Shown here: positions 13,323 through 30,356 of the stretch, piece after piece
Position numbering within the stretch: the stretch's first letter is position 1
Layout of the letters: each line of letters starts with the position of its first letter
Virus record (IMG/VR): IMGVR_UViG_3300042473_001265
Span: 62,001-126,000 of that record
Reading direction: 5' to 3' (one strand)
DNA length: 64,000 bases
Position numbers and translations under genes: made by a program
Notes under the pieces: generated by a model
What the model saw: the letters and a program-made list of their open reading frames with translations, nothing else
What the model was told of the DNA's origin: nothing
The model's database searches: none

Positions 13323-14045
13323 ATGAAAGATCATTTACTAGACCTGGTTCAACACACACTCGATTTGGGTGTAATTGACTTGGTTAAAATCACAGGCGAC
13401 GACAAAGAAACAGTTATTGCTGCGGTGGCAGAAGACCGTTCGGTAGTAGTGGAAGGCAAGTTTGCTGGACCAGTGGCAGATTTTGTTGGTACCTTTGGCA
13501 TGCCAAATTTAAACAAGTTAAAAATCTTGTTGAATCTTCAGGAATACCGCGAGAACGCCAAACTCAGTATCACACGCAAGACCACAGGCGAACCAGATGG
13601 TATTGCATTTGAAAACGCTGCTGGCGACTTTAAAAACAGCTATCGCTTTATGGCCAGTGGCATGGTGAACGACCAGCTCAAGAACTATAAATTTAAAACA
13701 CCAACTTGGCACATTGAGTTTGAACCAACTGTGGCCAGTATCCTGCGTTTGAAAATGCAAGCACAGGCCAACGCCGAAGAAACCAACTTTCAAGCAAAAA
13801 CCGATGGTACCGACTTGATGTTCTTCTTTGGCGATCACAGCACTCACGCTGGAAACTTTGTGTTTCAACCAAACATCACAGGACAGCTCAAACGAGCATG
13901 GTCGTGGCCTATTGTGACATTCATCAGCATTATGAATCTTGCTGGCGACAAGATTGTCCGGATCAGTGATGACGGTGCAGCAATGATCACTGTGGATTCA
14001 GGACTTGCTGTTTATAACTACATTCTTCCAGCACAGAGCAAGTGA
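13323..14045 (+). CDS. putative sliding clamp / processivity factor
   Basis: 240-aa alpha/beta protein of gp45/PCNA-like size in the replication block; assignment rests on context and general pattern. Confidence 0.5.
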   Translation: MKDHLLDLVQHTLDLGVIDLVKITGDDKETVIAAVAEDRSVVVEGKFAGPVADFVGTFGMPNLNKLKILLNLQEYRENAKLSITRKTTGEPDGIAFENAAGDFKNSYRFMASGMVNDQLKNYKFKTPTWHIEFEPTVASILRLKMQAQANAEETNFQAKTDGTDLMFFFGDHSTHAGNFVFQPNITGQLKRAWSWPIVTFISIMNLAGDKIVRISDDGAAMITVDSGLAVYNYILPAQSK

Positions 14046-15604
14046 TGGAACAAGACAATCTAACAGCCAAGCAAAAAGATTACGCCATATTTTTGCCGGC
14101 TATTAGTGGATTCTACGCCACCTTTGTAGGCAAGCAGCGTGATCCAGTAAATGGTCCCTATGTGGAGCCAGGTCGTATGCCCGCAGGTATTCCTGATATG
14201 GAACAACTGAACTGGCTCAACAGCCAGCAAGCATTGTTTCCATATCGGTGGAGTCTGTATTCAGGTGGACACGCCAACTTAGATCTTACCAAACCAGACT
14301 GGTCAGAGGATATGGTTCGTAATCGTGAGCCTGGCACACTCGTGTTAGGCGACTCGGGTGGATTCCAGATTGCCAAAGGTCTGTGGGAAGGCGATTGGAA
14401 AGCCAACTCGGGCTGTGCCAAAGCACAAAAGAAGCGCGAATCTATTCTCAAATGGCTAGACGGTGTTGCCACATACGGCATGACTCTGGATATCCCTACC
14501 TGGGTTATTCATGACAAGAATGCCAGCGACAAGTGCGGTATCAAAACACTGCAAGAAGCAGTTGACGCTACCAAATACAACAACGAATACTTTATGAAAC
14601 ATCGTAAAGGTGTTAAAAATGGTGGCATGAAAGTGTTGAATGTTCTGCAGGGTGCCAGTCATGCCGACGCTGATCGCTGGTACGACCTAATGAAAGACTA
14701 CTGCGATCCTGTCAAGTATCCAGACACTCACTTCAACGGCTGGAGCATGGGCGGACAGAACATGTGTGATGTGCATTTGGTGCTCAAGCGTTTGGTAGCA
14801 TTGCGACATGACAATTTGTTGCAACCAGGTATTCACGATTGGATGCACTTTTTGGGTACCAGCAAGTTGGAATGGGCCGTGCTGCTGACTGTGATTCAGC
14901 GAGCAGTTAGAAAGTATGTGAATCCAGAATTTACCATTTCTTTTGATTGTGCCAGTCCATTCCTGGCCACTGCCAATGGTCAAGTGTATCACGAGATTGT
15001 GCTGCCACACAATGGCAAGTGGAGTTACAGAATGAATCCCATTGCGGATGACAAAAAGTACAGCACAGACACACGCCCGTATGGACAAGCAGTGGTGGCA
15101 GATGGCCTGGTTGATAAATTCGACGAAAGTCCCATCAGCCAACATCTGCAGATGAAAGATATTTGTTATTACAAACCCGGTGACCTAAATAAGATTGGCA
15201 AAGAAGGCAAAACAAGTTGGGACAGTTTCAGCTATGCTTTGTTGATGGGTCATAATGTGTGGTTACATTTGGAATCAGTGCAACGGGCCAACAGAGAATT
15301 TGATGCTGGATCAAGACCCAAAATGATGTGGGACACCAATGGCGATTACACCAAGTTTGAAGACATTGTGGAAGCAATCTTTGCTACACCAGATCGAGCA
15401 GAAGCAGAAGCCATCATTGAACAGTACGATCGTTATTGGATGGACATAGTCGGCACTCGCGGATTCAAAGGCAAGAAGGCCAAAAACGCTCGTTCACAAT
15501 TCAACGCATTGTTCGAAACAGTTGACGACGAGGTCGATGATAATGTACAATCACAACAAGCAATAGACGATCGAATTGCAATTCAAGAAGATTTAGGTTT
15601 ATGA
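14042..15604 (+). CDS. dpdA: tRNA/DNA-guanine transglycosylase superfamily protein (DpdA-like)
   Basis: TGT motifs DSGGFQ, TLDIP, LQG, HFLG, FDCAS and HN; no CxCxxC Zn site; same region as folE, queD and queE. Confidence 0.7.
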   Translation: MMEQDNLTAKQKDYAIFLPAISGFYATFVGKQRDPVNGPYVEPGRMPAGIPDMEQLNWLNSQQALFPYRWSLYSGGHANLDLTKPDWSEDMVRNREPGTLVLGDSGGFQIAKGLWEGDWKANSGCAKAQKKRESILKWLDGVATYGMTLDIPTWVIHDKNASDKCGIKTLQEAVDATKYNNEYFMKHRKGVKNGGMKVLNVLQGASHADADRWYDLMKDYCDPVKYPDTHFNGWSMGGQNMCDVHLVLKRLVALRHDNLLQPGIHDWMHFLGTSKLEWAVLLTVIQRAVRKYVNPEFTISFDCASPFLATANGQVYHEIVLPHNGKWSYRMNPIADDKKYSTDTRPYGQAVVADGLVDKFDESPISQHLQMKDICYYKPGDLNKIGKEGKTSWDSFSYALLMGHNVWLHLESVQRANREFDAGSRPKMMWDTNGDYTKFEDIVEAIFATPDRAEAEAIIEQYDRYWMDIVGTRGFKGKKAKNARSQFNALFETVDDEVDDNVQSQQAIDDRIAIQEDLGL

Positions 15605-16110
15605 TTAGAAAAGATCACGACGATTCGGTAAAGTTCTTTACTGGAACAGAAGTAGAACACACTCCTGCATTGGGAAAGAAAACTCTGTTTGTGGTGGGTG
15701 TGCAGTCAGTGGATGACATTGCTGCACACCTAACAGGCTGCGAACACATCTACTTTGGCGCCAACCAGAGTTTTCCCAACTATGACATCAATGCTCGTGG
15801 TTGGCTAGACTGGGAGAACATGATTGGACCATTCCTAGACCGAGGTTATCTATGCACCCTAGACATAGATGTCAAATCCGTGGAAGGCTTGTTAGAAAGC
15901 GGATTCACCGAACATCACAACTTCATTCCCATGATATCGGTCAAGCTGCCTTACATACGCCAGCTGGGCTACAACGCCACACTCAAACTGGACGACAAAG
16001 ACTTTGCTGCTACCAATCCTGGAGTGTGGTGTCACAGTGTACACAAATTACAAAGTCGCACAGCATTCACTGACTGGGATCAGTACAACAAAGACGAGGT
16101 AGTAAAATGA
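15601..16110 (+). CDS. hypothetical protein coupled to the dpdA-like gene
   Basis: 169 aa; ATGA overlaps with both neighbours. Confidence 0.65.
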   Translation: MIRKDHDDSVKFFTGTEVEHTPALGKKTLFVVGVQSVDDIAAHLTGCEHIYFGANQSFPNYDINARGWLDWENMIGPFLDRGYLCTLDIDVKSVEGLLESGFTEHHNFIPMISVKLPYIRQLGYNATLKLDDKDFAATNPGVWCHSVHKLQSRTAFTDWDQYNKDEVVK

Positions 16111-16397
16111 TTAGATGGTTATGGTCAAGAATGATGAAATGGGGTTGGGATTTCAACCACAATCTACAAGAAAACGATGTAGTCTATGCCCTAGGAAGCA
16201 GAGATGATGATAGTATTGAATTGTCAGACCCATTAACCTTTAGAATACAAACAGTGTTGGGCGGCACCTTGATAGAAACCAGTTATTATCATAGGAAATC
16301 AGAGGATCGTCGCTCTAAATTATATATTGTCACACCAGAAGAAAACTTGTCTGAAAGTGTGGGTAAAATTGTAACCATGGAACTACTACAAAAATGA
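16107..16397 (+). CDS. hypothetical protein
   Basis: 96-aa ORF with coupled start and stop. Confidence 0.55.
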   Translation: MIRWLWSRMMKWGWDFNHNLQENDVVYALGSRDDDSIELSDPLTFRIQTVLGGTLIETSYYHRKSEDRRSKLYIVTPEENLSESVGKIVTMELLQK

Positions 16398-16867
16398 TAC
16401 AAGCACAACGAGAAGCAATAGATCGCATCGTGGAAAAGGCCGAACGCAAAGTCTGGGTCACATTCCAAAAAGAAGGCATACATAAATACCCTGCGGCGCT
16501 GACAGATCCAGCGTTGGCCACAGGAGATGAATATGATGTATCGTTTTTGGGCCATCCTCATCGCCACATCTTTCATTTCAGGGTGTGGATCGATGTGTTC
16601 CATAATGACCGGGACATCGAGTTCATCCAATTCAAACGCTGGCTCGAAAACCTGTTCCGGCCTAAACATACCGACAATAACAATAATACGGATTCCGTTC
16701 TAAGCCTTGACTACAAAAGTTGCGAGATGATCGCAGATGACATATATATACAGATTGCACAGCGATATCCGGACAGAGCTGTGTGGATTGAAGTATCCGA
16801 AGACAATGAAAACGGCTGCTTGATCAAGTATGAACTTTCTCGTCCTAACCTCTCTTTAAAAATTTAA
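16394..16867 (+). CDS. dpdL: QueD-like T-fold protein, DpdL-like (candidate CDG decarboxylase)
   Basis: FLGHPHRHIF matches the LxxxHRHxF signature I recall for DpdL; also has SCE and VSED T-fold motifs. Confidence 0.6.
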   Translation: MIQAQREAIDRIVEKAERKVWVTFQKEGIHKYPAALTDPALATGDEYDVSFLGHPHRHIFHFRVWIDVFHNDRDIEFIQFKRWLENLFRPKHTDNNNNTDSVLSLDYKSCEMIADDIYIQIAQRYPDRAVWIEVSEDNENGCLIKYELSRPNLSLKI

Positions 16868-16906
16868 AAATTTTTAAATCTCATCAACCTTTAAAAAAGA
16901 AACATC

Positions 16907-17128
16907 ATGGCCAAACAACTCGTACAAGCCAACCCCAAGTCTACAGCAGCACTGGAAGAACTAGGAACCTTTCTGGAATTTTGTTGCGATTTTGGATATC
17001 GTTACAATGAAGCAGACCTGTATAACTTCAAAAGTTATGCCTGGCAGCAATACAACAAGTTCACGCAGGGTAAAAACGCTCGTGACATGTGGGCCGAAGA
17101 TGCTCGTAGGTTAAACAGAAATATTTAA
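16907..17128 (+). CDS. hypothetical protein
   Basis: 73-aa ORF with an AAGAAA SD-like leader. Confidence 0.55.
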   Translation: MAKQLVQANPKSTAALEELGTFLEFCCDFGYRYNEADLYNFKSYAWQQYNKFTQGKNARDMWAEDARRLNRNI

Positions 17129-18401: not shown

Positions 18402-18672
18402 ACAATTTGCCGAACAGGCTAAAAAATATGCTCTTGATGCTATGATTAAAATCACAGACCGAGAACAAGCATTGAAAGTGTATTCGGAATCTTATGATAC
18501 AAAGTTCGCCGAGTTGATTGTGACGGAATGCTTGCGGCAGGTTGAAGAACAATACAAACCTGTGTTGGAAGATGAAGTCATGATGAAGGACACGCATTGG
18601 GGTGGATATGTCCAATGCGGTGTTGATAGTTATGTGGCCATTAGAGAACATTTTTTTGGAGTTGAAGAATGA
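18385..18672 (+). CDS. small phage protein of the MNE.I.E.A...KFAELIV..C...FGVEE family
   Basis: Paralogous to the ORFs at 59816 and 59989. Confidence 0.65.
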   Translation: MNEKIKQFAEQAKKYALDAMIKITDREQALKVYSESYDTKFAELIVTECLRQVEEQYKPVLEDEVMMKDTHWGGYVQCGVDSYVAIREHFFGVEE

Positions 18673-19871
18673 GAAAACTATTTTATTGTGGTTTGGAGTC
18701 GTATGAAGCAAGGTACACTCTACAACTGACTGAATGGAACCGTCGTGTGTTCGATCGTAGAGGGTTGGATGTAGTTTATGTTCCAGGCAGCACCATTGAC
18801 AACACACAAAGTATCAGCGTGGGACAGGTGTTGGATGCACACGGCCGCAGTTACTTTGGCATGAGCCAAATGATGAATCTTGTGCAAATGATGCGCCGAG
18901 GAGAAGTCACAAGTGAAGATGTGATCTACTTTGAAGACATGTTTCAGCCCGGTATCGAGAGCTTGCCTTATATTCTTGATCAAGTGGATGCGGATCAGCG
19001 TCCTAGGATCTATGTTCGCTGTCTTGCTCAGGCCATTGATCCTGATGATTTTGTTCATGTATGGGGCATGGAAAAGTGGATGGGCCTGTATGAAAAAATG
19101 GTCAATGAGTTTGTGACAGGTGTGCTTGCTACCAACGAAGAAATGGTTGCTCACATGCGTATTGCAGGCTGGACTGCTCCTATCTACAACATCTCAGGCT
19201 TGGCGTTCGGCAAGGCAGAAGTACTGGAACGCATCGGCGGTGCGGAAAAAGTCCGACCATTTGAAGAACGCCCTCGTCGAGTGGGTTTTGCAGCTAGGTT
19301 TGATCAAGAAAAACAACCGGGCTTCTTCATGGATCTGATTGAGATGTACGGTGAACTCACCACGGAGCCTTGTGAGTTTGCCATCTACTCCGGCGGTGCA
19401 TTGCGCAGCAACAATCCTGAATTTGTGACCCGTGCTAGAGCCATGGAAGCAGCCGGCAAGTTAAAAATCTATGACAACATAAGCAAGAATGAATATTATG
19501 ATCATCTCAATGACACTCGTGTATTGTTCAATTGTGCTTTACAGGACTGGGTTAGCAACACCGTCTCGGAAGCTGACACTCTTGGAGCTAATGTGCTCTA
19601 TCCTGCTTATCGTAGCTTTCCTGAAACTTTTGCAAACGATCCTAATCGACTTTATGTTCCCTGGAGCATAGATGATGCTTATCACAAGATGCAAAACTTG
19701 CTGCGTGAACCACATCACAACATGGGCTTGATCAGCGACTGGAACAACGGCACAGTTGATCGTGTGGTTGATATCATTGAAGGCCGCGGCGAACAATGGA
19801 ATCGTGCAGGCAATCGATATCGTGATCATGTGGCACAAGACAAATATCATGTGAGAAAGATCGAATCATGA
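18669..19871 (+). CDS. GT-B fold glycosyltransferase (GT4-like)
   Basis: C-terminal VGFAARFDQEKQPGFF and LFNCALQDWVSNTVSEADTLGANVLYP pattern. Confidence 0.75.
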   Translation: MRKLFYCGLESYEARYTLQLTEWNRRVFDRRGLDVVYVPGSTIDNTQSISVGQVLDAHGRSYFGMSQMMNLVQMMRRGEVTSEDVIYFEDMFQPGIESLPYILDQVDADQRPRIYVRCLAQAIDPDDFVHVWGMEKWMGLYEKMVNEFVTGVLATNEEMVAHMRIAGWTAPIYNISGLAFGKAEVLERIGGAEKVRPFEERPRRVGFAARFDQEKQPGFFMDLIEMYGELTTEPCEFAIYSGGALRSNNPEFVTRARAMEAAGKLKIYDNISKNEYYDHLNDTRVLFNCALQDWVSNTVSEADTLGANVLYPAYRSFPETFANDPNRLYVPWSIDDAYHKMQNLLREPHHNMGLISDWNNGTVDRVVDIIEGRGEQWNRAGNRYRDHVAQDKYHVRKIES

Positions 19872-20827: not shown

Positions 20828-21407
20828 TAAGATTCTAAAATTTGAACATGCGCTGGCAGAGTTCACCGGCGCACCTTATGTGATCATGACCGATTGCTGC
20901 ACACATGCCATCGAACTTTGTCTACGCTATGACCGGATACGAAGCTGTAGTTTTACAGCATTTACCTATCTGAGTGTGGCCATGACCATGCACAAACTGG
21001 GCATCAAGTACGGCCTGGAAAACGAAGTCTGGACCGGTGAGTATCACATTCATGACACTCGAATCTGGGACAGTGCTAGACGACTGGAAAAGAACATGTA
21101 TCGACCTGGTGCCATGCAGTGCTTGAGTTTTGGACACGGTAAACCCCTGCATATTGGTCGTGGTGGTGCCATCTTGTTGGATGATCCAGCAGCATACGAG
21201 ATCATGATTCGTCAACGCTATGATGGACGCGACCTAAATACATCACCCTGGCAAGCACAACACACATTTCAAGTTGGATATCACTACAAGCCCACGCCCG
21301 AAGAAGCTGTTCAAGGTCTGGCCATGTTGGAAGGAATCAAGGACCAAGGCTGTGTGCCTGTGCATGTCGCTTACCCAGACCTAAGAACTATTACCATAGT
21401 AGATTGA
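20820..21407 (+). CDS. short DegT/DnrJ/EryC1/StrS-like PLP-dependent protein
   Basis: FEHALAEFTGA..CTHAIEL and SFGHGKPLHIGRGG with the PLP lysine; only about 195 aa. Confidence 0.65.
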   Translation: MFDKILKFEHALAEFTGAPYVIMTDCCTHAIELCLRYDRIRSCSFTAFTYLSVAMTMHKLGIKYGLENEVWTGEYHIHDTRIWDSARRLEKNMYRPGAMQCLSFGHGKPLHIGRGGAILLDDPAAYEIMIRQRYDGRDLNTSPWQAQHTFQVGYHYKPTPEEAVQGLAMLEGIKDQGCVPVHVAYPDLRTITIVD

Positions 21408-21432
21408 CTTTGCAGTCTAAATACTATACAAT
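21404..21432 (+). promoter_or_regulatory. sigma70-type promoter for folE
   Basis: TTGACT-N17-TATAAT. Confidence 0.65.
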
Positions 21433-21472
21433 CAACAAAAGCAATCCACTGCGTCAACATCGGAGAAAAAGT

Positions 21473-22171
21473 ATGGACACAAGTAAAAATTTAGCACAGG
21501 TGCTTCGCGAACGAATGCAAGCCGACAACAAGCGTTTCTGGGCTGGTGATAACATCAGCGAGTATGTTAAAGATGAGTTTGACAAGAACTATCTTATTGA
21601 AGAGGCAACTGTAGCGTTTGAGGGTGTACTCGATGCACTGTTAATTGATCGTGAGAATGATCCTAATAGCAAAGGTACAGCACGCCGCCTTGCTAAAATG
21701 TACTTCAATGAAATTATGGCAGGTAGATATGAACCAGCACCAGATGCAACCGCTTTCCCAAATGATTCGGCAGACCGTTACGAAGGTATGTTGGTGGTTA
21801 GAAGTGAGCTTCGTAGTATGTGTAGTCATCATCATCAGCCTGTGTCCGGTGTGGCTTATATCGGAATCATTGCTGCTCAAAAACTTATTGGTCTTAGCAA
21901 GTACACTCGCATTGCTCAGTGGTGTGCCCGTCGCGGTACATTACAGGAAGAACTCTGCAATGACATTGCACGAGAAATCTCCAAAGCAACTGAAAGCGAC
22001 AATGTAGCAGTGTATCTTGAAGCGGAACATGGCTGCTGCACCAATAGAGGAATAATGGCGCACAGTAGTCTGACACAGACCACAGTGCTCAAAGGTGCAT
22101 TCAAGGACGACAAAGGAACAAAGAAGGAATTCTTTGACAATATCTTGCTTCAGTCAAGAAACGGTAATTAA
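21473..22171 (+). CDS. folE: GTP cyclohydrolase I
   Basis: SMCSHHHQP, GLSKYTR, QEEL, HGCC..RG and TKKEF motifs; ATG at 21473 with GGAG SD. Confidence 0.95.
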   Translation: MDTSKNLAQVLRERMQADNKRFWAGDNISEYVKDEFDKNYLIEEATVAFEGVLDALLIDRENDPNSKGTARRLAKMYFNEIMAGRYEPAPDATAFPNDSADRYEGMLVVRSELRSMCSHHHQPVSGVAYIGIIAAQKLIGLSKYTRIAQWCARRGTLQEELCNDIAREISKATESDNVAVYLEAEHGCCTNRGIMAHSSLTQTTVLKGAFKDDKGTKKEFFDNILLQSRNGN

Positions 22172-22187
22172 ATTAAAGGAAAATAAT

Positions 22188-22715
22188 ATGACACAAACTG
22201 TACCCAATGTAAAATTTGCATTTCGCGAAGGCGACGAAGCTCCCGAAGATGGCGGTTGCCCGATCGGCGGAGAATTTGTTTTTAAAACAAGCACGGATTT
22301 GTTTGCCAACAAACAAGTGATTGTCTTTAGTCTGCCCGGAGCATTTACTCCCACTTGCAGCACATACCAACTGCCGGGCTTTGAACAAAAGTTTGAAGAA
22401 TTTCGAGCCAAAGGCATTGATGAGATTTATTGCATCAGTGTCAACGATGCCTTTGTAATGAACGAATGGGCTCGATCGCTGGGTATTAAAAATATCAAAG
22501 TCGTCCCAGACGGCGCCGGTACTTTTACCGACGGAATGGGCATGACAGTTGACATGAGTGAGATTGGATTTGGCCTGCGCAGTCGTCGTTATGCGGCAGT
22601 GATCAACAACTGCAAAGTAGAAAAAATGTTTGTGGAACCCGACTCCAGTGCCGCAGATCCAGATCCTTACGGTGTTTCTAGCCCCGAGAGTGTGATGAAG
22701 TACATCGACCAATGA
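22188..22715 (+). CDS. peroxiredoxin (Prx5 type)
   Basis: [20 protein letters not shown] and RSRRYA motifs. Confidence 0.9.
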
Positions 22716-23038
22716 CCTATGTTGTAACCGAAGAATGTATTCTTTGCAAACACACTGACTGTGTTGCGGTGTGTCCGGTAGATTGTTTTGTGGAAGGTCC
22801 AAACTTTCTAGCAATCGACCCGGATGGATGTATCGACTGTGCAGTGTGTGTGCCCGAGTGTCCAGTCAATGCTATCTATGCCGAGGATGATGTTCCGGCA
22901 CACTTACAAGCATTTGTGGATATCAATGCAGAATTGGCAAAAAAATGGTCGCCTATAACCAAACGAAAAGATCCACTGCCAGACCATGAAAAATGGACAA
23001 ATGTTCCCAATAAATTAGAACATTTGGATCGCAGTTGA
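22712..23038 (+). CDS. fdxA: 7Fe ferredoxin (FdxA-like)
   Basis: [18 protein letters not shown] and [12 protein letters not shown] motifs. Confidence 0.9.
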
Positions 23039-23095: not shown

Positions 23096-25309
23096 ATGAC
23101 CAAAGTATTGAAATTTTTTGCAATTGCCGTGATGGCAATGACCATGGGGCTGGCAGTAGCAGCTGATGTAGTTCGCTATGCGTATATCACTGCCATGGTA
23201 AAACAACCCAATGGCACGGTGATTAACCAACAATGGAAATACACCTACATCAACAACAAGCTTCGAGCCAAGGACCTAATCAGTGCCACAACAGTTGGCG
23301 CCGTGGCATCTGTTGCGCGGCCTGTAACCCCAACTGTGACTCCAGCGGTGACTCCAGCGGTGATCCCAACTGTGCCCAGGCTAGTGTTTGATGCCAATTT
23401 CAACGCGGCCACCTACTACAACAACCCCAACATGGGCACGCCTACAGCAGTGCCCAGTTTTGACCCCAGCTGGTATTTGACCAGTGAGGCTGGCAAAACA
23501 ATCTCAGCCACGGGTGCCAACTATGCCTATGCTCGTGGCTGGACTGGCAAGGGCTCGACCATTATGGTGATGGACACTGGCATTGCTGTGGCTGGCAGTG
23601 AGTTTGCTGGAAAAATCAAATACAGCGTGGACTACACACAGACCAGCATATTGGACACAGTGGGTCACGGCAGCCAGGTGGCAGCCATTGCGGCCGCTGC
23701 TCGTGACGGCAAAGGCATGCATGGTGTGGCCTACGATGCCAATCTGGCCATTGCCAAGATTGGCACGGGTAATAGCGTCAGCATGGCATCAGCTCGTCAA
23801 GCACTGGTGTGGGCACAGCAGTACACAGACATTGTGGTGGCTAACTTGAGTTCCAATGTGAACTATGCCGCTGACTACACCAGATCTGTTTACAGGTTGG
23901 CTGACGGTACTTTTTACAGCAACCATGTCAACTACGGTGGCACCAACTACTACAACTTGGAACGACCAACTGATTGGTCTGCGGTGTTGGGCAAGCAAAT
24001 GGTGCTGGTTGTGGCCGCAGGCAATCAAGGCCTAGGCTATGTGCAGTCGCCTGCGGTGTTTGCGTCTGCTGTGGGCCGAGACGGCCGACTAGTGATGAAT
24101 GGGCAGATGATTATTGCAGGTGGCTGGAACACCACCACCAACTCAGTGGAGGGCAACGGTGCAGGACACATTTGCAAAGTGTCAGTGAATCAGGTGTGTC
24201 AAGACAGTTATCGCACCAAAGACTTCTTCTTGATGGCGCCCAGTGTGGCCATTGAAACTGTGGGTGCAGACGGTGCATATCGAACCAGCAGCGGCACCAG
24301 TTTTGCTGCACCTGCCATATCTGGTGCAGTGGCTGTGGTTCATCAGTTGTGGCCCTACATGAAGGGTGATCAGCTGGCTCAGCTGCTGTTTAAAACTGCC
24401 AATAAAAACATAAAAAACTACAACGCAGATCAAATGGGCCATGGGCTGTTGGATCTCAACAGGGCCACACAGCCAGTGGGGTCGCTGGGCGTTTCAGTCA
24501 CAGGTCGAACAGGCACAGCGCGGCCACTCAGCGGCGGTTTGGCCATTGCTGGTGTGATGGATGCATCAGTGTCCAGCATGCTGTCGGCTGTGTCGGCTGT
24601 TGACAGCTTTGAACGAGACTTCACAGTGAACCTGTCATCTGCTGCTGGCAGCACTGTGCAGCCTGTGGAACACATGCAGCAGACTGCGGGACAAAGTTGG
24701 AGCAGTAAATTTGCAGGTCCTTCAGTCACAGCCCGAGGTGTGACCATCAGTGGCACGGGTGCCAACATCAGTGTGGGAGTCAGCAGCCAAGCATTTGATC
24801 TTCATCGGCAAGCCTTGCAGTATCAAGCCACAGTCACACAAGTGGCACACAATCCTTGGGTCAACTTCTCTGGCATGTGGGGACAAAGTGCAGGCTCCAC
24901 CACTGCTGAATTCAGCATGTTGTACAGCCCAGACGCTTCGGGTGCATGGGCACAGGCAGGTGTTATGAACACTGCGGGCCAATACCAGTACGCCATGGTC
25001 AATCGCGTGTCTGACATTCGCAGTGCCTATGCTGTAGCAGGGTGGAGGAACAACAGTGTGAACTTGTATGCTGGCTTCAAGCCTACTGTGACCAGTGGCT
25101 CAGTCAACTTGACAGTTCCCACCAGTGTTGATGCTGATGGAGTCATGCACTACAGCAACGCAACCAATCAGATCCGTAACCAACGCACTGGTTTTGTTGG
25201 CGCCAGTGTTGACTATGCACCTGTGCGCAATCACAGCCTAAATTTATCAACAACATATGGCCAAGATGGCACAGGCCAAATTGGTTTGAAATACAAGATT
25301 GCTTTATAA
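23096..25309 (+). CDS. secreted S8 (subtilisin-like) peptidase with a C-terminal beta-rich, autotransporter-like domain
   Basis: Signal peptide; catalytic triad motifs MDTG, GHGSQVA and GTSFAAP; beta-strand-rich C-terminus. Confidence 0.85.
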   Translation: MTKVLKFFAIAVMAMTMGLAVAADVVRYAYITAMVKQPNGTVINQQWKYTYINNKLRAKDLISATTVGAVASVARPVTPTVTPAVTPAVIPTVPRLVFDANFNAATYYNNPNMGTPTAVPSFDPSWYLTSEAGKTISATGANYAYARGWTGKGSTIMVMDTGIAVAGSEFAGKIKYSVDYTQTSILDTVGHGSQVAAIAAAARDGKGMHGVAYDANLAIAKIGTGNSVSMASARQALVWAQQYTDIVVANLSSNVNYAADYTRSVYRLADGTFYSNHVNYGGTNYYNLERPTDWSAVLGKQMVLVVAAGNQGLGYVQSPAVFASAVGRDGRLVMNGQMIIAGGWNTTTNSVEGNGAGHICKVSVNQVCQDSYRTKDFFLMAPSVAIETVGADGAYRTSSGTSFAAPAISGAVAVVHQLWPYMKGDQLAQLLFKTANKNIKNYNADQMGHGLLDLNRATQPVGSLGVSVTGRTGTARPLSGGLAIAGVMDASVSSMLSAVSAVDSFERDFTVNLSSAAGSTVQPVEHMQQTAGQSWSSKFAGPSVTARGVTISGTGANISVGVSSQAFDLHRQALQYQATVTQVAHNPWVNFSGMWGQSAGSTTAEFSMLYSPDASGAWAQAGVMNTAGQYQYAMVNRVSDIRSAYAVAGWRNNSVNLYAGFKPTVTSGSVNLTVPTSVDADGVMHYSNATNQIRNQRTGFVGASVDYAPVRNHSLNLSTTYGQDGTGQIGLKYKIAL

Positions 25310-25701
25310 TGAAACATAGAACTCACATATTTTCGGAAAATATTCCAAGTTCAATTGAGGATAGTTCTGCTCCATGGACAAGTTTGGTAAGAGAAGACTT
25401 CCATGTGGCAGTGTACGAGGACCGTTATCCGTGTACGCCAGGCCACCTGTTGTTTGTGCCCAAGCACAATACTATGTCAGTGGTACTGGATGCATTCAAC
25501 GATGCAATTATACATGGACAGACCATGATTGAGAATGGTCAATGTGACGGATTCAATATTGGTATGAATTACGGCAGTGCCGCAGGACAGACAGTCGAGT
25601 GGCCACATGTTCATTTGATTCCCAGACGGCACGGAGATGTTGAGGACCCAGTGGGAGGTGTACGCAATACCATTCCTGGCAAGGGCAACTACCATAAATA
25701 A
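25309..25701 (+). CDS. HIT family hydrolase
   Basis: DRYPCTPGHLLFVPK, GFNIGMN and AGQTVEWPHVHLIPR (first His of the triad replaced by Trp). Confidence 0.85.
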   Translation: MKHRTHIFSENIPSSIEDSSAPWTSLVREDFHVAVYEDRYPCTPGHLLFVPKHNTMSVVLDAFNDAIIHGQTMIENGQCDGFNIGMNYGSAAGQTVEWPHVHLIPRRHGDVEDPVGGVRNTIPGKGNYHK

Positions 25702-25776: not shown

Positions 25777-26328
25777 ATGGCAAACTCATCAGTGGACTTA
25801 ATCCGTCATTTAGAAGAAAACTTACAAAACACTAGACCAGTGAACTATAGGTACACCAGCACCAAAGAGTATCACGACTCTTTTCCCTGCGCCTATCGAC
25901 AATGGCGTGCTGACAGTCACTGTAATCTAATACACGGCTACAGCTTCAACATGAAGTTTTACTTTGGTACCAATGATCTGGATGCTCGCAACTGGGCTGC
26001 TGATTATGGAGGTCTCAAAGAACTCAAAGGTATATTGGAAAGTCAATTTGATCACACTTTATTGGTGGCCGAGGACGATCCTGAACTGGCGTTTTACAAA
26101 GAAATGGAACGCCGCAAGTTGGCCAAACTGACTATTCTGCCCAAACTAGGCTGCGAAGGTCTGGCTGACCAGCTGTACAAATATGTCAATGGTGTTTACA
26201 TTCCAGACATGTGGGGTCAGGCAGAATCCAAACGCTTGTGGTGCTATCGTGTGGAAGTGCGTGAAACACAAGCCAACATGGCGTTCCGTGAAGGACATCG
26301 TGAGTGGAATGAAGATTTATTTGAATAA
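25777..26328 (+). CDS. queD: 6-carboxy-5,6,7,8-tetrahydropterin synthase
   Basis: HCNLIHGYS, FDHTLL, GCEGLA and VEVRET motifs. Confidence 0.85.
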   Translation: MANSSVDLIRHLEENLQNTRPVNYRYTSTKEYHDSFPCAYRQWRADSHCNLIHGYSFNMKFYFGTNDLDARNWAADYGGLKELKGILESQFDHTLLVAEDDPELAFYKEMERRKLAKLTILPKLGCEGLADQLYKYVNGVYIPDMWGQAESKRLWCYRVEVRETQANMAFREGHREWNEDLFE

Positions 26329-27158: not shown

Positions 27159-27160
27159 TC

Positions 27161-27940
27161 ATGACATCAACACTGGAACAACGCATCAAACAATACTGGA
27201 ACAATCAGCCTTGCAACATTCGACACAGCGGAAATGAAATTGGCAGTTTAGATTTCTTTAAAGAAGTATCGGCTCGTAGATTCCAAGTGGAGCCACATAT
27301 TCCGGAGTTTGCCGGCTTTCATCTCTGGCAGGGCAAACAGGTTTTGGAAATTGGCCCAGGTATTGGATCTGATGCTGCGGAGTTTGCTCGTCACGGTGCT
27401 GACTATTACGGCATAGACTACAGTGAAGAAAGTGTCAAACTTGCTCGTAAACGATTCGAAGTTGAAGAACTCGACGGCAATTTCCACTGTGGTGACGCCA
27501 GCGACCGAGACATGTACATTGGCTTGCCGCAGTTTGATTTGATCTACAGTTACGGTGTTATACATCATTTTCCTGCCATTGATAAAATTATCAACAATGT
27601 GCATCAAGCTCTCAAGCCCGGTGGCGAATTCCGTTTTATGGTGTATGCCCGTGACAGTTGGAAACAGGCCATGATCAATAAAGGTCTAGATCAATACGAA
27701 GCACAGGCCGGGTGTCCCTATGCCAAAAGCTATACCAAAGATGATATTGCAGTGCTGTTGGGATCGCAATTTCACATTGAGCGGTTGCGGCAGGATCATT
27801 GTTTCATGTATAATGTACAAGCATACAAGCAAGGCCGATATGAACTGGAGCCGTGGTTTGAAGCCATGCCTGCTGCAATGAGAGAAGCTGTCAGAGAGTA
27901 TCTAGGCTGGCACCTGTTGGTCAAAGCACGAAAGATTTAA
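27161..27940 (+). CDS. class I SAM-dependent methyltransferase
   Basis: VLEIGPGIGSD, GIDYS, FDLIYSYGVIHH and LKPGG motifs. Confidence 0.9.
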   Translation: MTSTLEQRIKQYWNNQPCNIRHSGNEIGSLDFFKEVSARRFQVEPHIPEFAGFHLWQGKQVLEIGPGIGSDAAEFARHGADYYGIDYSEESVKLARKRFEVEELDGNFHCGDASDRDMYIGLPQFDLIYSYGVIHHFPAIDKIINNVHQALKPGGEFRFMVYARDSWKQAMINKGLDQYEAQAGCPYAKSYTKDDIAVLLGSQFHIERLRQDHCFMYNVQAYKQGRYELEPWFEAMPAAMREAVREYLGWHLLVKARKI

Positions 27941-27943
27941 TAA

Positions 27944-28354
27944 ATGAAATTGCCAAAAAACTTATCCGTAGATTCAGACTGGTCAACAATCGATCTGTCG
28001 TCGGCAGAGTACACATTAGACAGTAACATGACAACGCCCTACACAATCAATACTTCTACAATCAATACTTCTCCATGGAAAAATGTTTCTGGTACAAGCA
28101 GTACCGGTACAGTGAGCATCAGCGAAAATGGTATTGAAATGCAACCCGGTGCTGATATTGTGATTGGCGGCCAGAGTTTGACAAAAACACTGGCTGCCAT
28201 AAACGAACGATTGGCCATTTTACAACCAAACACCCAACTAGAATCAGAGTGGAAAGAATTGAAAGAGCTGGGCGAACGCTACCGCGAAATGGAGCAAGAC
28301 CTGCTGGAAAAAGCCCGAGTCTGGGGTATACTCAAAGCACCAAGCAAGCGATAG
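27944..28354 (+). CDS. hypothetical protein
   Basis: 136-aa ORF with a coiled-coil C-terminus. Confidence 0.55.
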   Translation: MKLPKNLSVDSDWSTIDLSSAEYTLDSNMTTPYTINTSTINTSPWKNVSGTSSTGTVSISENGIEMQPGADIVIGGQSLTKTLAAINERLAILQPNTQLESEWKELKELGERYREMEQDLLEKARVWGILKAPSKR

Positions 28355-28367
28355 ATGTAACACACCA

Positions 28368-28871
28368 ATGACCGAAGAAAAAAAATCTAATATTGCCAAA
28401 GGTAGAAATAGCTTTGATGCAGATATAGATGGTGCCATTGTTCCGTTCTTCAATCGAAATGTCACGCCGTATGGCACTGAAGCAGGTGGTGCTAAATTTG
28501 AACTGGTTCCTGTTACCAAACAAAAAGACATAATGATCAATCATGCTAGGATGTATGCCCAGCAAGAACATGATAGAATTATGCAGTTGGTTGCTGTGTT
28601 GGAAAAGCAAGCGCAGGATATCAAACGCCGATTGGATGTAACAGATGCAGTGCATGCAGCAGAGTATCAATTTCAAGTGGTGATAGGCAACTGTTACTGG
28701 CTAGCCTGGGACCGCCGCAAAGAAAAAATGCTGCTGGTTCATCATGGACCCAATGACTGGAGTAGTGGGCCGCCCGATAATTATGTGTATCAGTCACAGG
28801 TAAAATACATGGGTGACCATACATGGATGGAAATAACTGAAGGAACAGGCAATGGGAACATATTACCGTAA
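28368..28871 (+). CDS. hypothetical protein (DUF2452-like)
   Basis: 167 aa; coiled segment followed by a YQF.VVIGNCYWL pattern. Confidence 0.55.
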   Translation: MTEEKKSNIAKGRNSFDADIDGAIVPFFNRNVTPYGTEAGGAKFELVPVTKQKDIMINHARMYAQQEHDRIMQLVAVLEKQAQDIKRRLDVTDAVHAAEYQFQVVIGNCYWLAWDRRKEKMLLVHHGPNDWSSGPPDNYVYQSQVKYMGDHTWMEITEGTGNGNILP

Positions 28872-29472
28872 CATAACAAAATTCATTGACACAATTGACA
28901 ACGGCCATTGGATCGAAATTGGAGTGGACCGTGGCGAAGGCAGTACCCGATTCTTTGCGGATCTGTGCCAAGCTCGTGGGGTGGATTTTTACGGTGTAGA
29001 TATGGATGCTGAACAAATTAAACGGGCAACCAGCAATTTAATGGTTGACGGAACACTGCCAGATCATGTAAAATTAGCACAGGCCAAGGGCGAAGAATTT
29101 TTACAACAGTTGGACCCAGCAGTTAAAATATCATTGGCATACCTGGACAACTTTGATTGGGATTACTGGTTGGGTGGCGCAGAAGAAGGGTTTGTAGCCG
29201 GTGTCAAACAGAAGTATAGAGATTTAATGAACATTGAGATGACCAACCTAAATAGTCAGCAAACACACCTGTTGCAGGCAATCTTGTTGATGAACAGGAT
29301 GACTGACAACAGCATTATCATATGTGATGACACTTGGTATCATCCGCAAGAAGGTGTTTTCATTGGCAAGTGCTCTGCTGCTATTCCTTTTCTAATGCTG
29401 CAAGGATATAGACATTTGCACAATGATGGATACAGGCAAAACAGCGGCGCAATTTTTGGAAGATTTAAGTAA
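28852..29472 (+). CDS. SAM-dependent methyltransferase-like protein
   Basis: WIEIGVDRGEGST, LAYLDNFD and IICDDTW motifs. Confidence 0.65.
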   Translation: MGTYYRNITKFIDTIDNGHWIEIGVDRGEGSTRFFADLCQARGVDFYGVDMDAEQIKRATSNLMVDGTLPDHVKLAQAKGEEFLQQLDPAVKISLAYLDNFDWDYWLGGAEEGFVAGVKQKYRDLMNIEMTNLNSQQTHLLQAILLMNRMTDNSIIICDDTWYHPQEGVFIGKCSAAIPFLMLQGYRHLHNDGYRQNSGAIFGRFK

Positions 29473-29480
29473 AGGATAAT

Positions 29481-30356
29481 ATGTTCGGAACAAACGAAAT
29501 CATTGGCAAGAAGTACTTTAAAGACGCACAAGAAAACACCTTGATGGTGACCAGTATGTTCTTTACCTTACAAGGTGAAGGACCCTATGCTGGCTTGCCA
29601 GCACTGTTTATTCGACTGGCCAAATGCAACTTGGATTGCAGTTTCTGTGACACATTCTTTGATGACGGTGATGTGTTCACCTATGCAGAACTGGAACAAA
29701 AGGCACATGAAACTATTCGCGACTTTTGGGTCAGCAAAGGCAAACCAGTGCCTGAGTGGGCAGTGCGGGATCGCAACGACTATCCCGGAGTTGTTCTGGT
29801 AATGACTGGCGGCGAACCCTTGCTGCAAGACAACATCTCGGGATGGATGAAACGACAGTTGTTGCACTACAAAGCAGTGCAGGTTGAAAGCAACGGCATA
29901 CCTGACACAGATGTGCCTACTGGTGTCACACTGGTGTGTTCGCCCAAATGCATTGAGAAGAATGGCAAGGCTGTCAAGTATCTTGCACCCAGTAAAACTA
30001 TTTTAGACCGTGCAGACTGTTTGAAGTTTGTTGTAACTGCCGATGCGGAATCACCTTACAACACAGTTCCAGACTGGGCATTTGAATGGAAACAGCGCAA
30101 CCCCAACAAGGAAGTTTACTGTAGCCCAATGAACGTCTACAACAGTTTTCCACAGAAGATCAAATTGTTGCGAGCAGAGAAAGGCCAAATAACCATGGCT
30201 GAACGCAGCACTGTGGATGAAGTGATTAGTTTTTGGGAACCAGGGCTGTTGAACTTGGCTGACAACCAACGCAATCATGAATATGTGGGGCAGTTTTGTA
30301 TAGAGAATGGGTTCAAGTTGAACTTGCAGCAGCATCTATACACAAGTTTGGCATAA
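29481..30356 (+). CDS. queE: 7-carboxy-7-deazaguanine synthase (radical SAM)
   Basis: FFTLQGEGPYAG, FIRLAKCNLDCSFCDT, TGGEPLLQ, VESNG, SPK and LNLQQH motifs. Confidence 0.92.
   Translation: MFGTNEIIGKKYFKDAQENTLMVTSMFFTLQGEGPYAGLPALFIRLAKCNLDCSFCDTFFDDGDVFTYAELEQKAHETIRDFWVSKGKPVPEWAVRDRNDYPGVVLVMTGGEPLLQDNISGWMKRQLLHYKAVQVESNGIPDTDVPTGVTLVCSPKCIEKNGKAVKYLAPSKTILDRADCLKFVVTADAESPYNTVPDWAFEWKQRNPNKEVYCSPMNVYNSFPQKIKLLRAEKGQITMAERSTVDEVISFWEPGLLNLADNQRNHEYVGQFCIENGFKLNLQQHLYTSLA

What the first reader, a model, noticed from the sequence alone, without database searches (positions are those of the whole stretch)
14042..30356. 7-deazaguanine DNA-modification pathway of the DpdA + DpdL type, with no QueC in view
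Seen: TGT-fold gene, LxxxHRHxF T-fold gene, folE, queD and queE; no queC, queF or queA in this window. Established: FolE-QueD-QueE make CDG, DpdA inserts 7-deazaguanines into phage DNA, and DpdL has been linked to decarboxylation to 7-deazaguanine. Inference: the genome carries dDG, dCDG or a derivative as anti-restriction protection. Alternative: the enzyme modifies the phage's own GUN tRNAs (Tyr, Asp, Asn and His are all encoded).
Basis: partly seen in the sequence, partly recalled or inferred. Interest (0 to 1): 0.62.

Follow-up and report, generated by a model that had tools for sequence, protein, structure and literature searches.

The report
Phage 7-deazaguanine DNA modification genes
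A lake-water jumbo phage carries the genes to make a 7-deazaguanine base and probably swap it for guanine in its own DNA, using a very divergent transglycosylase that standard family scans miss, plus a conserved glycosyltransferase that hints at a further undescribed step.

Summary
The window holds folE (21404-22171), queD (25777-26328), queE (29481-30356) and a DpdL homologue with the LxxxHRHxF motif (16394-16867). The 520-aa ORF at 14042-15604 matches no Pfam, NCBIfam, PHROG or PDB sequence. Its model (pLDDT 91) matches tRNA-guanine transglycosylases (Z 19.2) and keeps the three catalytic Asp.

By profile comparison its family is closest to DpdA2, the tested DNA transglycosylases of Vibrio phages VH7D and nt-1 (96-97.5% probability). 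It is undetectable against DpdA1 and weak against DpdA3. No queC, queF, queA or second TGT occurs in the 340-kb genome (98% complete) or in five relatives.

In diverged relatives the same gene, in the same place beside the DNA polymerase, pairs with QueC instead of DpdL. The nearest cultured relative, PA5oct, has G-site restriction-resistant DNA. The DNA-modification reading is therefore well supported; the tRNA alternative is unlikely.

New here: a GT4-type glycosyltransferase (18669-19871) and a small unknown protein (15601-16110) accompany DpdL in several phage lineages. The final base may therefore be more than plain 7-deazaguanine. No chemistry was measured. I rate it a new variant of a known kind.

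The parts
13323..14045 (+). 240-aa protein of unknown function that precedes the transglycosylase gene in this phage lineage. It lies directly before it here and in the P0124 context, with a small ORF or gap between in PA5oct, L006 and the marine relatives. The PA5oct homologue gp170 is annotated 'structural protein'.
   Evidence: phrog_12062, 1e-29. BLASTP: 35% to PA5oct gp170, 48% to marine relatives L093/L095, 26% to L006.
14042..15604 (+). Divergent DpdA-type guanine transglycosylase (TGT fold), the proposed inserter of the 7-deazaguanine base into DNA. The catalytic Asp are D104, D150 and D302. There is no conserved CxCxxC...H zinc site.
   Evidence: AF2 pLDDT 91. Foldseek top 50 all TGTs. 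VIA Z 19.2 over 306 aa. hhalign: 97.5% to the DpdA2 alignment, 96% to VH7D DpdA2, 85% to E. coli TGT. D104, S105, G107, H269 and D302 are invariant in 62 diverse members.
15601..16110 (+). 169-aa protein of unknown function ('o169') that co-occurs with DpdL.
   Evidence: 36% to ACP17 gp122, which lies directly upstream of the ACP17 DpdA. 52% to the marine relatives, where it lies directly before DpdL. tblastn finds it in 13 phage records, all of them DpdL carriers. No family or Atlas lead.
16394..16867 (+). DpdL, a QueD-like T-fold protein proposed to be a CDG decarboxylase. Motif L52xxxH56-R57-H58xF60, with conserved SCE and SEDxE.
   Evidence: definition of the motif in PMC10516641.
16907..17128 (+). 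73-aa ORF, conserved between DpdL and the GT in the marine relatives.
   Evidence: 34% identity, E 1e-7, to L093 7771-7998.
18669..19871 (+). GT4-type (GT-B, retaining) glycosyltransferase-like protein, conserved beside DpdL and DpdA in several phage lineages. Its acceptor is unknown.
   Evidence: 66% to the BUCT-ZZ01 ORF that abuts DpdL. 22-24% to X1, PA5oct gp167 and ACP17 gp124. The AF2 model is of medium confidence (pLDDT 67; C-terminal domain 84-97). Foldseek top hits are MshA, BshA, PimA and WaaG at E 3e-9 and weaker. Atlas neighbours carry Glycos_transf_1. 17 of the 22 phage records with the PA5oct-type GT also carry DpdL.
21404..22171 (+). FolE, GTP cyclohydrolase I (GTP to H2NTP). The Pfam domain starts at aa 75, so the true start may lie downstream of the TTG.
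   Evidence: Pfam 3.5e-39. PHROG 2.4e-44. The CSHH and HGCC zinc motifs are visible in the translation. 76% to the marine relatives.
22712..23038 (+). 7Fe-type ferredoxin, a possible electron donor for radical-SAM QueE. This is inference only.
   Evidence: Pfam DUF3470 1.1e-18 and Fer4. The role is inferred from position and from QueE's known need for a reductant.
25309..25701 (+). HIT-family protein, conserved inside the cluster of the marine relatives. Role unknown.
   Evidence: Pfam HIT 3.4e-8. 40% to L093 11904-12329.
25777..26328 (+). QueD, 6-carboxytetrahydropterin synthase. It has the CxxxHGY variant, shared with the phiST and ACP17 QueD.
   Evidence: Pfam PTPS 1.6e-13. PHROG QueD-like 3.7e-35. 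Alignment A4. It is the only PTPS hit in the genome.
29481..30356 (+). QueE, radical-SAM 7-carboxy-7-deazaguanine synthase.
   Evidence: PHROG QueE-like 1.6e-44. Five NCBIfam QueE models match but all below cut-off; the best is 5.9e-18. CxxxCxxC at aa 49-56. 43% to ACP17 QueE.

Best explanation
This is a phage-encoded pathway that replaces guanine in the phage's own double-stranded DNA with a 7-deazaguanine base.

- FolE converts GTP to dihydroneopterin triphosphate.
- QueD converts that to 6-carboxytetrahydropterin.
- Radical-SAM QueE converts that to 7-carboxy-7-deazaguanine (CDG). The neighbouring ferredoxin may reduce QueE.
- The phage has no QueC, so the pathway cannot go on to preQ0. Instead DpdL, a QueD-like T-fold metalloenzyme, is proposed to decarboxylate CDG to 7-deazaguanine (DG).
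- The 520-aa TGT-fold enzyme then exchanges G in replicated DNA for the free base. It would use the conserved Asp nucleophile D302 and the base-binding residues D104 and D150.

The modified DNA would evade restriction enzymes whose sites contain G.

Shown here: gene identities, the fold, the catalytic residues, the absence of QueC/QueF/QueA, and the comparative context. Inferred: DNA rather than tRNA as substrate, DG as the inserted base, and the anti-restriction role. The conserved GT4 glycosyltransferase, the 169-aa protein and the HIT protein belong to the module, but no step can yet be assigned to them.
For: Gene identities.

DpdL: homologous to the proteins named DpdL in phiST and ACP17, with the diagnostic motif. 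phiST, which has FolE, QueD, QueE and DpdL but no QueC, carries dDG in place of all detectable G (PMC10516641).

Transglycosylase: TGT fold at Z 19.2. D104, D150 and D302 align to E. coli TGT D89, D143 and D264 and are invariant or nearly so in 62 diverse members. The closest characterised family is DpdA2: 97.5% probability, E 5e-12, to an alignment with ACP17, nt-1 and VH7D; 96% to VH7D DpdA2 alone. VH7D DpdA2 inserts preQ1, preQ0 and CDG into DNA in E. coli (PMC10516641). The A1 HMM hits ACP17 gp123 at 1.5e-8.

Context: family members at 29-60% identity sit next to deazaguanine genes. These are DpdL, FolE and QueE in the marine relatives; QueC in the P0124 context; QueC and FolE in L006; PTPS and FolE in the P0249 context; DpdL and QueE in PA5oct.

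Absences: no QueC, QueF, QueA or second TGT in the 98%-complete genome. No QueC over cut-off in five relatives, one of them a 100%-complete 346,856-bp genome with terminal repeats.

Against: No chemical or kinetic measurement exists for this phage; it is known only from lake metagenome contigs.

DpdL's decarboxylase activity has never been shown. Hutinet et al. could not obtain dDG in E. coli from dpdL plus dpdA of phiST or ACP17.

The transglycosylase is so divergent that no HMM library recognises it. Only residues 101-314 align to DpdA2, so substrate and target cannot be read from homology.

The restriction pattern of PA5oct suggests modification in only some sequence contexts, and the base was not identified.

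The conserved GT4, o169 and HIT genes have no place in the simple scheme.
Confidence: 0.72

Rival explanations
1. The pathway is as above, but the final DNA base is not plain 7-deazaguanine. The conserved GT4 glycosyltransferase adds a sugar or another group to a 7-deazaguanine derivative, either on the free base or on DNA. It may work with o169, HIT and, in this phage, the neighbouring epimerase, aminotransferase-like and methyltransferase genes. The result would be an undescribed hypermodified guanine.
For: The GT4-like gene lies within about 3 kb of DpdL or DpdA in the window lineage, the marine relatives, PA5oct-like phages, ACP17, X1/BUDD, BUCT-ZZ01, Phosso and BCSR5. The gene order differs between them. 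17 of the 22 phage records with the PA5oct-type GT are among the 28 DpdL records, out of 50,697 records. o169 occurs in 13 records, all DpdL carriers. dpdL plus dpdA alone gave no dDG in E. coli, and the authors suspected missing enzymes. PA5oct is hit by nucleases that sense hypermodified DNA. A GalE-like epimerase, or an SDR, recurs near the cluster.
Against: 7-deazaguanine has no obvious hydroxyl to glycosylate. phiST reaches full dDG without this GT. Four other DpdL phages show no GT within 9 kb. The GT model is only of medium confidence. The GT could serve an unrelated target such as virion or host glycans. END nucleases also hit non-glycosylated dPreQ0 and dG+ phages.
Confidence: 0.28
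2. The transglycosylase inserts CDG, not DG, into DNA. DpdL or another enzyme then decarboxylates it in place, or the DNA keeps dCDG.
For: VH7D DpdA2, the nearest tested relative, can insert CDG at low efficiency. Hutinet et al. consider CDG a possible DpdA3 substrate. dCDG exists in nature, in STSV-2 DNA.
Against: The published DpdL model was judged to fit the free base. No dCDG was found in phiST DNA.
Confidence: 0.15
3. The enzyme is a tRNA-guanine transglycosylase that modifies position 34 of the phage's own GUN tRNAs (Tyr, Asp, Asn, His) with a 7-deazaguanine.
For: The fold equals that of tRNA TGTs. The phage encodes all four GUN tRNAs. hhalign to E. coli TGT gives 85%.
Against: Profile similarity is higher to the DNA-acting DpdA2 (96-97.5%) than to TGT. 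The CxCxxC...H zinc site of tRNA TGTs is not conserved. The Pfam TGT model does not match. The gene lies in the replication module beside PolB, as does the DpdA1 of phage 9g. DpdL is so far linked only to DNA dDG. PA5oct DNA itself is restriction-resistant.
Confidence: 0.05
4. FolE, the QueD-like proteins and the GT4 make a pterin glycoside or another small metabolite, as in cyanobacterial biopterin glucoside synthesis. The TGT-fold protein would have another role.
For: UDP-glucose:tetrahydrobiopterin glucosyltransferases (5ze7, 9v0l) are among the structural neighbours of the GT model. FolE and a PTPS-family enzyme are shared with that pathway.
Against: Those hits rank about 20th or lower among generic GT4 enzymes. 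QueE, which commits to the deazapurine, is present and conserved. The transglycosylase keeps all its catalytic Asp. Relatives pair the same transglycosylase with QueC.
Confidence: 0.03

Closest known systems
DpdA2 DNA transglycosylases of Vibrio phages VH7D and nt-1, and the related DpdA of Acidovorax phage ACP17
   Same: TGT-fold core with DSGGxQ, the LD(I/E)P-type Asp, HxLG and SxD(S/C) motifs. hhalign 93.5-97.5%. The A1 HMM hits ACP17 gp123 at 1.5e-8. All are encoded beside folE and que genes. ACP17 also has o169, GT4, DpdL and QueE in the same block.
   Different: Only about 190-215 of the 520 residues align, at about 24% identity. tblastn and BLASTP barely detect the relation (pairwise E 3e-4). 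The N-terminal 100 and C-terminal 200 residues are specific to this family. VH7D and nt-1 pair DpdA2 with QueC or QueF, not with DpdL.
Cellulophaga phage phiST system (DpdA3 + DpdL + FolE/QueD/QueE, no QueC), with dDG replacing all G
   Same: Same logic: CDG synthesis genes plus DpdL and no QueC. DpdL is homologous (33%, E 7e-7, same motif). QueD shares the CxxxHGY variant.
   Different: The phiST transglycosylase is the 259-aa DpdA3; hhalign to this family gives only 58% over 94 columns. phiST has no GT4 or o169 homologue; it has a P-loop ATPase and a MazG instead.
Pseudomonas jumbo phage PA5oct (Wroclawvirus) replication-module cluster
   Same: The closest cultured relative. The genes occur in the same order as in the window, though other ORFs lie between some of them on both sides: PolB, the 240-aa protein, the transglycosylase (36% identity), GT4, DpdL (53%), QueE, a structural protein and a 5'-3' exonuclease. 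Its DNA resists G-site restriction enzymes.
   Different: All these PA5oct genes except QueE are annotated hypothetical. The modified base has not been identified. The PA5oct GT is of another subtype (24% identity). The window carries about 9 kb of extra genes inside the block.
Bacterial tRNA-guanine transglycosylase (Tgt; PDB 2ash, 1q2r and others)
   Same: Same TIM-barrel fold (Z 18-19, about 305 aligned residues). The same three catalytic or base-binding Asp.
   Different: 14-15% identity. No Pfam TGT match. No conserved zinc site. Different genomic context. The likely substrate is DNA.

Membership tests
TGT superfamily (tRNA-guanine / DNA-guanine transglycosylases) | (beta/alpha)8 TGT fold | tested here: met
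   AF2 pLDDT 91. Foldseek top 50 all TGT, E about 3e-7. VIA Z 19.2, 306 aa, rmsd 4.3 A.
TGT superfamily (tRNA-guanine / DNA-guanine transglycosylases) | Catalytic Asp nucleophile and two base-binding Asp (Z. mobilis D280, D102, D156; E. coli D264, D89, D143) | tested here: met
   hhalign pairs D302, D104 and D150 with E. coli D264, D89 and D143. D104 and D302 are invariant and D150 is at least 90% conserved in 62 members.
TGT superfamily (tRNA-guanine / DNA-guanine transglycosylases) | CxCxxC...H zinc-binding site | tested here: not met
   No conserved Cys cluster after D302. Only C375 (66%) and H404 (87%) are partly conserved.
TGT superfamily (tRNA-guanine / DNA-guanine transglycosylases) | Match to Pfam PF01702 over the gathering score | tested here: not met
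   No hit for the protein or in the six-frame genome search. 2 of 62 family members reach only E 0.043.
DpdA2 (phage DNA 7-deazaguanine transglycosylase) | Sequence or profile homology to nt-1 and VH7D DpdA2 | tested here: inconclusive
   hhalign gives 93.5-97.5%, but only over residues 101-314. tblastn with either family does not retrieve the other. This is best read as a sister family.
DpdA2 (phage DNA 7-deazaguanine transglycosylase) | Inserts a 7-deazaguanine base into dsDNA | not testable with these tools
   Needs an enzyme assay or nucleoside mass spectrometry.
DpdA1 | Homology to phage 9g DpdA | tested here: not met
   hhalign probability 0.4%, the same as the negative control.
DpdA3 | Homology to phiST CGPG_00065 (gp042) | tested here: not met
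   BLASTP finds nothing. The A1 HMM has no hit in the phiST genome. hhalign gives 58% over 94 columns.
DpdA4 | Homology to HVTV-1 gp69 / DUF6610 | tested here: inconclusive
   The Pfam scan, whose library should hold DUF6610 (PF20314), gave no hit. No direct comparison with the HVTV-1 protein was made.
DpdL (proposed CDG decarboxylase) | LxxxHRHxF motif in place of QueD's CxxxHGH | tested here: met
   LGHPHRHIF at aa 52-60. Aligned with the phiST and ACP17 DpdL.
DpdL (proposed CDG decarboxylase) | Homology to phiST CGPG_00067 and the ACP17 DpdL | tested here: met
   tblastn: 54% (5e-36) to ACP17 and 33% (7e-7) to phiST.
DpdL (proposed CDG decarboxylase) | Co-occurrence with DpdA, FolE, QueD and QueE without QueC | tested here: met
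   and for relatives.
DpdL (proposed CDG decarboxylase) | CDG decarboxylase activity | not testable with these tools
   Never shown for any member.
QueE (CDG synthase) | Radical-SAM cluster motif and family match | tested here: met
   CxxxCxxC at aa 49-56. PHROG 2076 at 1.6e-44. Five NCBIfam QueE models match, best 5.9e-18, but all below their equivalog cut-offs.
QueD (CPH4 synthase) | PTPS fold family with the catalytic Cys and a His pair | tested here: inconclusive
   Pfam PTPS over cut-off and PHROG QueD-like. The Cys is present, but the motif is CxxxHGY, as in the phiST and ACP17 QueD.
FolE (GTP cyclohydrolase I) | Pfam PF01227 over cut-off | tested here: met
   134.5 bits against a cut-off of 27. 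NCBIfam FolE models match but below their equivalog cut-offs.
GT4 retaining glycosyltransferases (GT-B) | Two-Rossmann GT-B fold with a C-terminal nucleotide-sugar domain | tested here: inconclusive
   Model pLDDT is 67 overall; the C-terminal domain reaches 84-97 and the N-terminal domain is partly low. Foldseek top hits are MshA, BshA, PimA and WaaG at E 3e-9 and weaker, probability 1.00. No Pfam hit for this protein, but some PA5oct-type homologues carry PF00534.

The most novel reading that the evidence does not exclude
The DpdL-type clusters that carry the conserved GT4 glycosyltransferase and the 169-aa protein make a so-far undescribed, further-decorated 7-deazaguanine in DNA, for example a glycosylated derivative. 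These clusters occur in this lake phage lineage, its abundant marine relatives, PA5oct, ACP17, X1, BUCT-ZZ01 and Phosso. The base would be inserted by a new DpdA subfamily that current annotation pipelines do not see. The GT and o169 could also be the 'missing enzymes' that prevented reconstitution of dDG synthesis in E. coli.
Probability: 0.28. Interest if true: 0.8.

Novelty: new variant of a known kind. Interest (0 to 1): 0.6.

Why it matters
7-deazaguanine DNA modifications shield phages from restriction enzymes and CRISPR nucleases, and they are targets of newly found bacterial defences (END nucleases, Dag glycosylases).

The transglycosylase family found here is large: 927 clusters at 50% identity with E up to 1e-3. 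It is common in lake and ocean jumbo-phage contigs, and Pfam, NCBIfam and PHROGs do not recognise it. Surveys of DNA modification therefore probably undercount it. PA5oct, a therapy candidate, was reported with QueE and a PTPS but no transglycosylase.

The family pairs with either QueC or DpdL, which makes it a natural experiment in substrate switching.

The conserved GT4 and o169 companions give concrete candidates for the unexplained failure to reconstitute the DpdL route. They also give a testable lead to a new modified base.

Tried and rejected
1. Sequence-level identification of the 520-aa protein gave nothing. I tried Pfam, NCBIfam, PHROGs, phmmer against the PDB, a 62-sequence profile against the PDB, and Pfam scans of all 62 members. 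Only fold prediction and profile-profile comparison worked.

2. The one sub-threshold QueC hit in the genome (11 bits, C1:19254-19367) is a NadE-like PP-loop ORF with an SGGIDSS motif, not QueC.

3. The search for related loci with the GT alignment returned only 84-100% identical relatives, so it added no diversity.

4. The 169-aa protein got no lead from Pfam, PHROGs, NCBIfam or the Atlas (best score 0.81, at chance level).

5. Public runs hold this phage only as Logan contigs from lake metagenomes, with no raw long reads. No base-calling or kinetic signal of modification could be sought, and read laying was not used.

6. A nucleotide-level route through a phosphoribosyltransferase was considered, because relatives and BUCT-ZZ01 carry a PRTase in the cluster. 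This genome has none.

7. Four DpdL phages (RHph_I1_18, Bakedbeans, Ahp1_CNU-2021, D479) were checked for the GT and the transglycosylase within 9 kb of DpdL. Neither was found, so the GT link is frequent but not universal.

8. No tree of DpdA families was built, because identities of 14-24% over about 200 columns would not support one.

9. No alternative genetic code was needed.

Full report
**What the window is.** The window is bases 62001-126000 of a single 340,172-bp viral contig that CheckV rates 98% complete. All genes in the region lie on the + strand. G+C is about 45%. The window also holds 30 tRNA genes. The contig recurs in more than 20 lake-water metagenome studies from 2020 to 2025, always as assembled contigs. 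This is an uncultured freshwater jumbo phage. Its closest cultured relative for this region is the Pseudomonas jumbo phage PA5oct.

- folE is 21404-22171 (Pfam GTP_cyclohydroI 3.5e-39; PHROG 2.4e-44).
- queD is 25777-26328 (Pfam PTPS 1.6e-13; PHROG QueD-like 3.7e-35).
- queE is 29481-30356 (PHROG QueE-like 1.6e-44). Five NCBIfam QueE models match below their equivalog cut-offs. CxxxCxxC lies at aa 49-56.
- The motif L-x3-H-R-H-x-F occurs once in six frames of the window, at nt 16547 in the 157-aa ORF 16394-16867. Hutinet et al. 2023 (PMC10516641) define DpdL by exactly this change from QueD's CxxxHGH. The ORF is 54% identical to the ACP17 protein and 33% identical (E 7e-7) to the phiST protein that they named DpdL. 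An alignment shows the shared H..YP, PHRHxF, SCE and SEDGE blocks.
- The 'TGT-fold gene' is the 520-aa ORF 14042-15604. It carries GDSGGFQ but matches nothing in Pfam, NCBIfam or PHROGs, and nothing in the PDB by sequence. A 62-sequence family profile also fails.

**The transglycosylase.** A full HMMER scan of 1.84 billion cluster representatives found 927 related clusters at E up to 1e-3. With 62 diverse members as the alignment, AlphaFold2 gave a confident model (pLDDT 91, pTM 0.89). The 50 best Foldseek matches in the PDB are all tRNA-guanine transglycosylases (E about 3e-7). VIA-align gives Z 19.2 with 306 residues at 4.3 A to Thermotoga TGT, and model residues 11-431 are covered.

Profile-sequence alignment to E. 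coli TGT pairs D104, D150 and D302 with D89, D143 and D264. These are the two base-binding Asp and the nucleophile. D104 and D302 are invariant and D150 nearly so across the family. The CxCxxC...H zinc site of TGTs is not conserved.

**Placement among DpdA families.** hhalign of the family profile gave the following.

| Compared with | Probability | Note |
|---|---|---|
| DpdA2-type alignment (ACP17, BUCT-ZZ01, X1, nt-1, VH7D) | 97.5% | E 5e-12, 189 columns |
| VH7D DpdA2 alone | 96% | |
| nt-1 DpdA2 alone | 93.5% | |
| E. coli TGT | 85% | |
| phiST DpdA3 | 58% | 94 columns |
| phage 9g DpdA1 | 0.4% | |
| unrelated control | 0.3% | |

ACP17 gp123 is itself 34-36% identical to the nt-1 and VH7D DpdA2, and the family HMM hits it at 1.5e-8. 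VH7D DpdA2 is experimentally a DNA transglycosylase that accepts preQ1, preQ0 and, weakly, CDG.

The family is thus a deep sister of DpdA2 and not a member of DpdA1, DpdA3 or the tRNA TGTs. DpdA4 was not compared directly. Only the barrel core (residues 101-314) aligns.

**Absence of QueC.** A six-frame search of the whole genome gave several negative results. No QueC scores over cut-off; the single 11-bit hit is a NadE-like PP-loop ORF. There is no QueF, QueA or Pfam TGT. There is only one PTPS hit and one copy of the transglycosylase. Five related contigs also lack QueC over cut-off; one of them is a 100%-complete 346,856-bp genome with terminal repeats. The absence is a property of the clade and not an assembly gap.

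**Comparative context.** The block is syntenic with PA5oct: PolB, a 240-aa protein, the transglycosylase, later QueE, a structural protein and a 5'-3' exonuclease. It is even closer to abundant marine contigs (L093, L095), whose transglycosylase is 60% identical, DpdL 59% and FolE 76%.

Family members at 29-48% identity keep the same neighbourhood but swap partners.

- In the P0124 context, QueC lies one gene downstream of the transglycosylase.
- In L006, QueC and FolE follow three or four genes downstream.
- In the P0249 context the gene abuts PTPS and FolE.
- In L005 a DpdL-like ORF follows.

This repeated association with deazapurine genes, with either QueC or DpdL, is the strongest functional evidence short of chemistry. 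Three other sampled contexts (P0268, P0196, P0170) were short or uninformative.

**Experimental anchors from the literature.**

- phiST (FolE, QueD, QueE, DpdL, no QueC) has dDG in place of all detectable dG.
- Vibrio phage VP1 also has full 7-deazaguanine substitution (bioRxiv 10.1101/2025.10.29.685425).
[quoted passage not shown] The authors inferred a modified G and noted QueE and a PTPS, but named no transglycosylase (PMC12191111).

**Conserved companions not in the published scheme.**

- The 400-aa ORF 18669-19871 is 66% identical to the ORF that abuts DpdL in the cyanophage BUCT-ZZ01. It is 22-24% identical to ORFs beside DpdA or DpdL in X1, PA5oct (gp167) and ACP17 (gp124).
- Its model is of medium confidence (pLDDT 67; C-terminal domain 84-97). 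It matches retaining GT4 glycosyltransferases such as MshA, BshA, PimA and WaaG. Some homologues carry Pfam Glycos_transf_1.
- In 50,697 phage records the PA5oct-type GT occurs in 22. Of these, 17 are among the 28 DpdL carriers. The carriers are not independent records, but they span at least six lineages with different gene orders.
- The 169-aa ORF 15601-16110 has homologues in 13 records, all DpdL carriers. In ACP17 and the marine relatives the homologue lies next to the DpdA or DpdL gene.
- A HIT protein (25309-25701) is shared with the marine relatives.
- phiST and four other DpdL phages lack the GT nearby, so it is not required for dDG everywhere.
- Hutinet et al. failed to obtain dDG from dpdL plus dpdA of ACP17 and suspected missing enzymes. 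These companions are obvious candidates.

**Mechanism and confidence.** I put 0.72 on the core explanation: FolE, QueD and QueE make CDG; DpdL converts it, probably to 7-deazaguanine; and the divergent DpdA-type enzyme exchanges it for G in replicated phage DNA, which protects against restriction. The identity of the final base is the weakest step. I give about 0.28 to a further GT-dependent derivative and 0.15 to CDG being the inserted base.

The tRNA alternative gets 0.05. Against it stand the closer kinship to DNA-acting DpdA2, the missing zinc site, the position in the replication module (as for the DpdA1 of phage 9g) and the restriction-resistant DNA of PA5oct.

**Novelty.** A DpdA plus DpdL pathway without QueC is published, so the kind is known. 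What is new is the transglycosylase subfamily, which is large, environmental and invisible to the standard libraries. Also new are its alternation between QueC and DpdL partners and the conserved GT4 and o169 companions. I rate it a new variant of a known kind, with interest 0.6.

**Limits.** No measurement of the DNA exists. The supplementary tables of Hutinet et al. are not held. I therefore cannot say whether their psiBLAST lists already include PA5oct-type proteins. The GT model is of medium quality.

Noticed in passing
window 19868-21407 and 26337-29472: Sugar-nucleotide-type and methyltransferase genes are interleaved with the que genes. They are a GalE-like epimerase (19868-20827), a half-length DegT-like aminotransferase that keeps the SFxxxK lysine (20793-21407), a GT-A-like protein (26337-27158), two SAM methyltransferases (27134-27940, 28852-29472) and a DUF2452 protein (28368-28871). 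Apart from a weak epimerase match (21-25% identity), none has a counterpart in the stretches of the marine relatives or PA5oct that I compared, so they look like lineage-specific additions.
   Followed up: partly
window 22095-23038: A peroxiredoxin (Redoxin) gene and a 7Fe ferredoxin (DUF3470) gene lie directly after folE. The ferredoxin could supply electrons to radical-SAM QueE. This is inference only.
   Followed up: no
window 23096-25309: A 737-aa subtilase (Peptidase_S8) with an N-terminal signal-like hydrophobic stretch and a long C-terminal extension sits in the middle of the replication/modification block. That is unusual cargo for this position.
   Followed up: no
window 39006-49767: Thirty tRNA genes in about 10 kb, followed by an ARAGORN tmRNA call (49362-49767, flagged with an asterisk, tag peptide of 29 residues). 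One tRNA-Ile call has anticodon TAT and one tRNA-Ser call has ACT; both calls have unusual geometry.
   Followed up: no
L006 6508-11631, and the context of P0124 (no DNA held): Diverged relatives keep the order PolB, 240-aa protein, transglycosylase, but carry QueC (and FolE) instead of DpdL, GT and o169. One transglycosylase family thus serves two different deazaguanine end products.
   Followed up: partly
L093 10451-10999; L012 2748-3209: The marine relatives and the cyanophage BUCT-ZZ01 carry a phosphoribosyltransferase inside the deazaguanine cluster, and the marine relatives also carry two 2OG-Fe(II) oxygenases. This hints at nucleotide-level handling or oxidation of the base in those phages. 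The window's genome has no PRTase.
   Followed up: partly
L104 8251-9402 (Vibrio phage Bakedbeans gp176): Here DpdL is the C-terminal third of a 383-aa ORF. The roughly 250-aa N-terminal part matched none of the window proteins I used as BLAST queries.
   Followed up: no
window 9644-12301, compared with L004 834-6060 and L006 2265-5592: The family-B DNA polymerase is one intact 885-aa ORF here. In PA5oct it is split by a homing endonuclease. In other relatives it is split by an intein fragment or a nucleoside deoxyribosyltransferase gene.
   Followed up: no
genome C1:19017-19970 (outside the window): A NadE-like PP-loop ORF (SGGIDSS motif) is the only sub-threshold QueC-model hit. It suggests phage-encoded NAD synthesis.
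   Followed up: partly
window 30757-32081: Two adjacent paralogous DUF6071 genes lie between a virion-structural-protein homologue and the 5'-3' exonuclease. They have no counterpart in the relatives compared.
   Followed up: no
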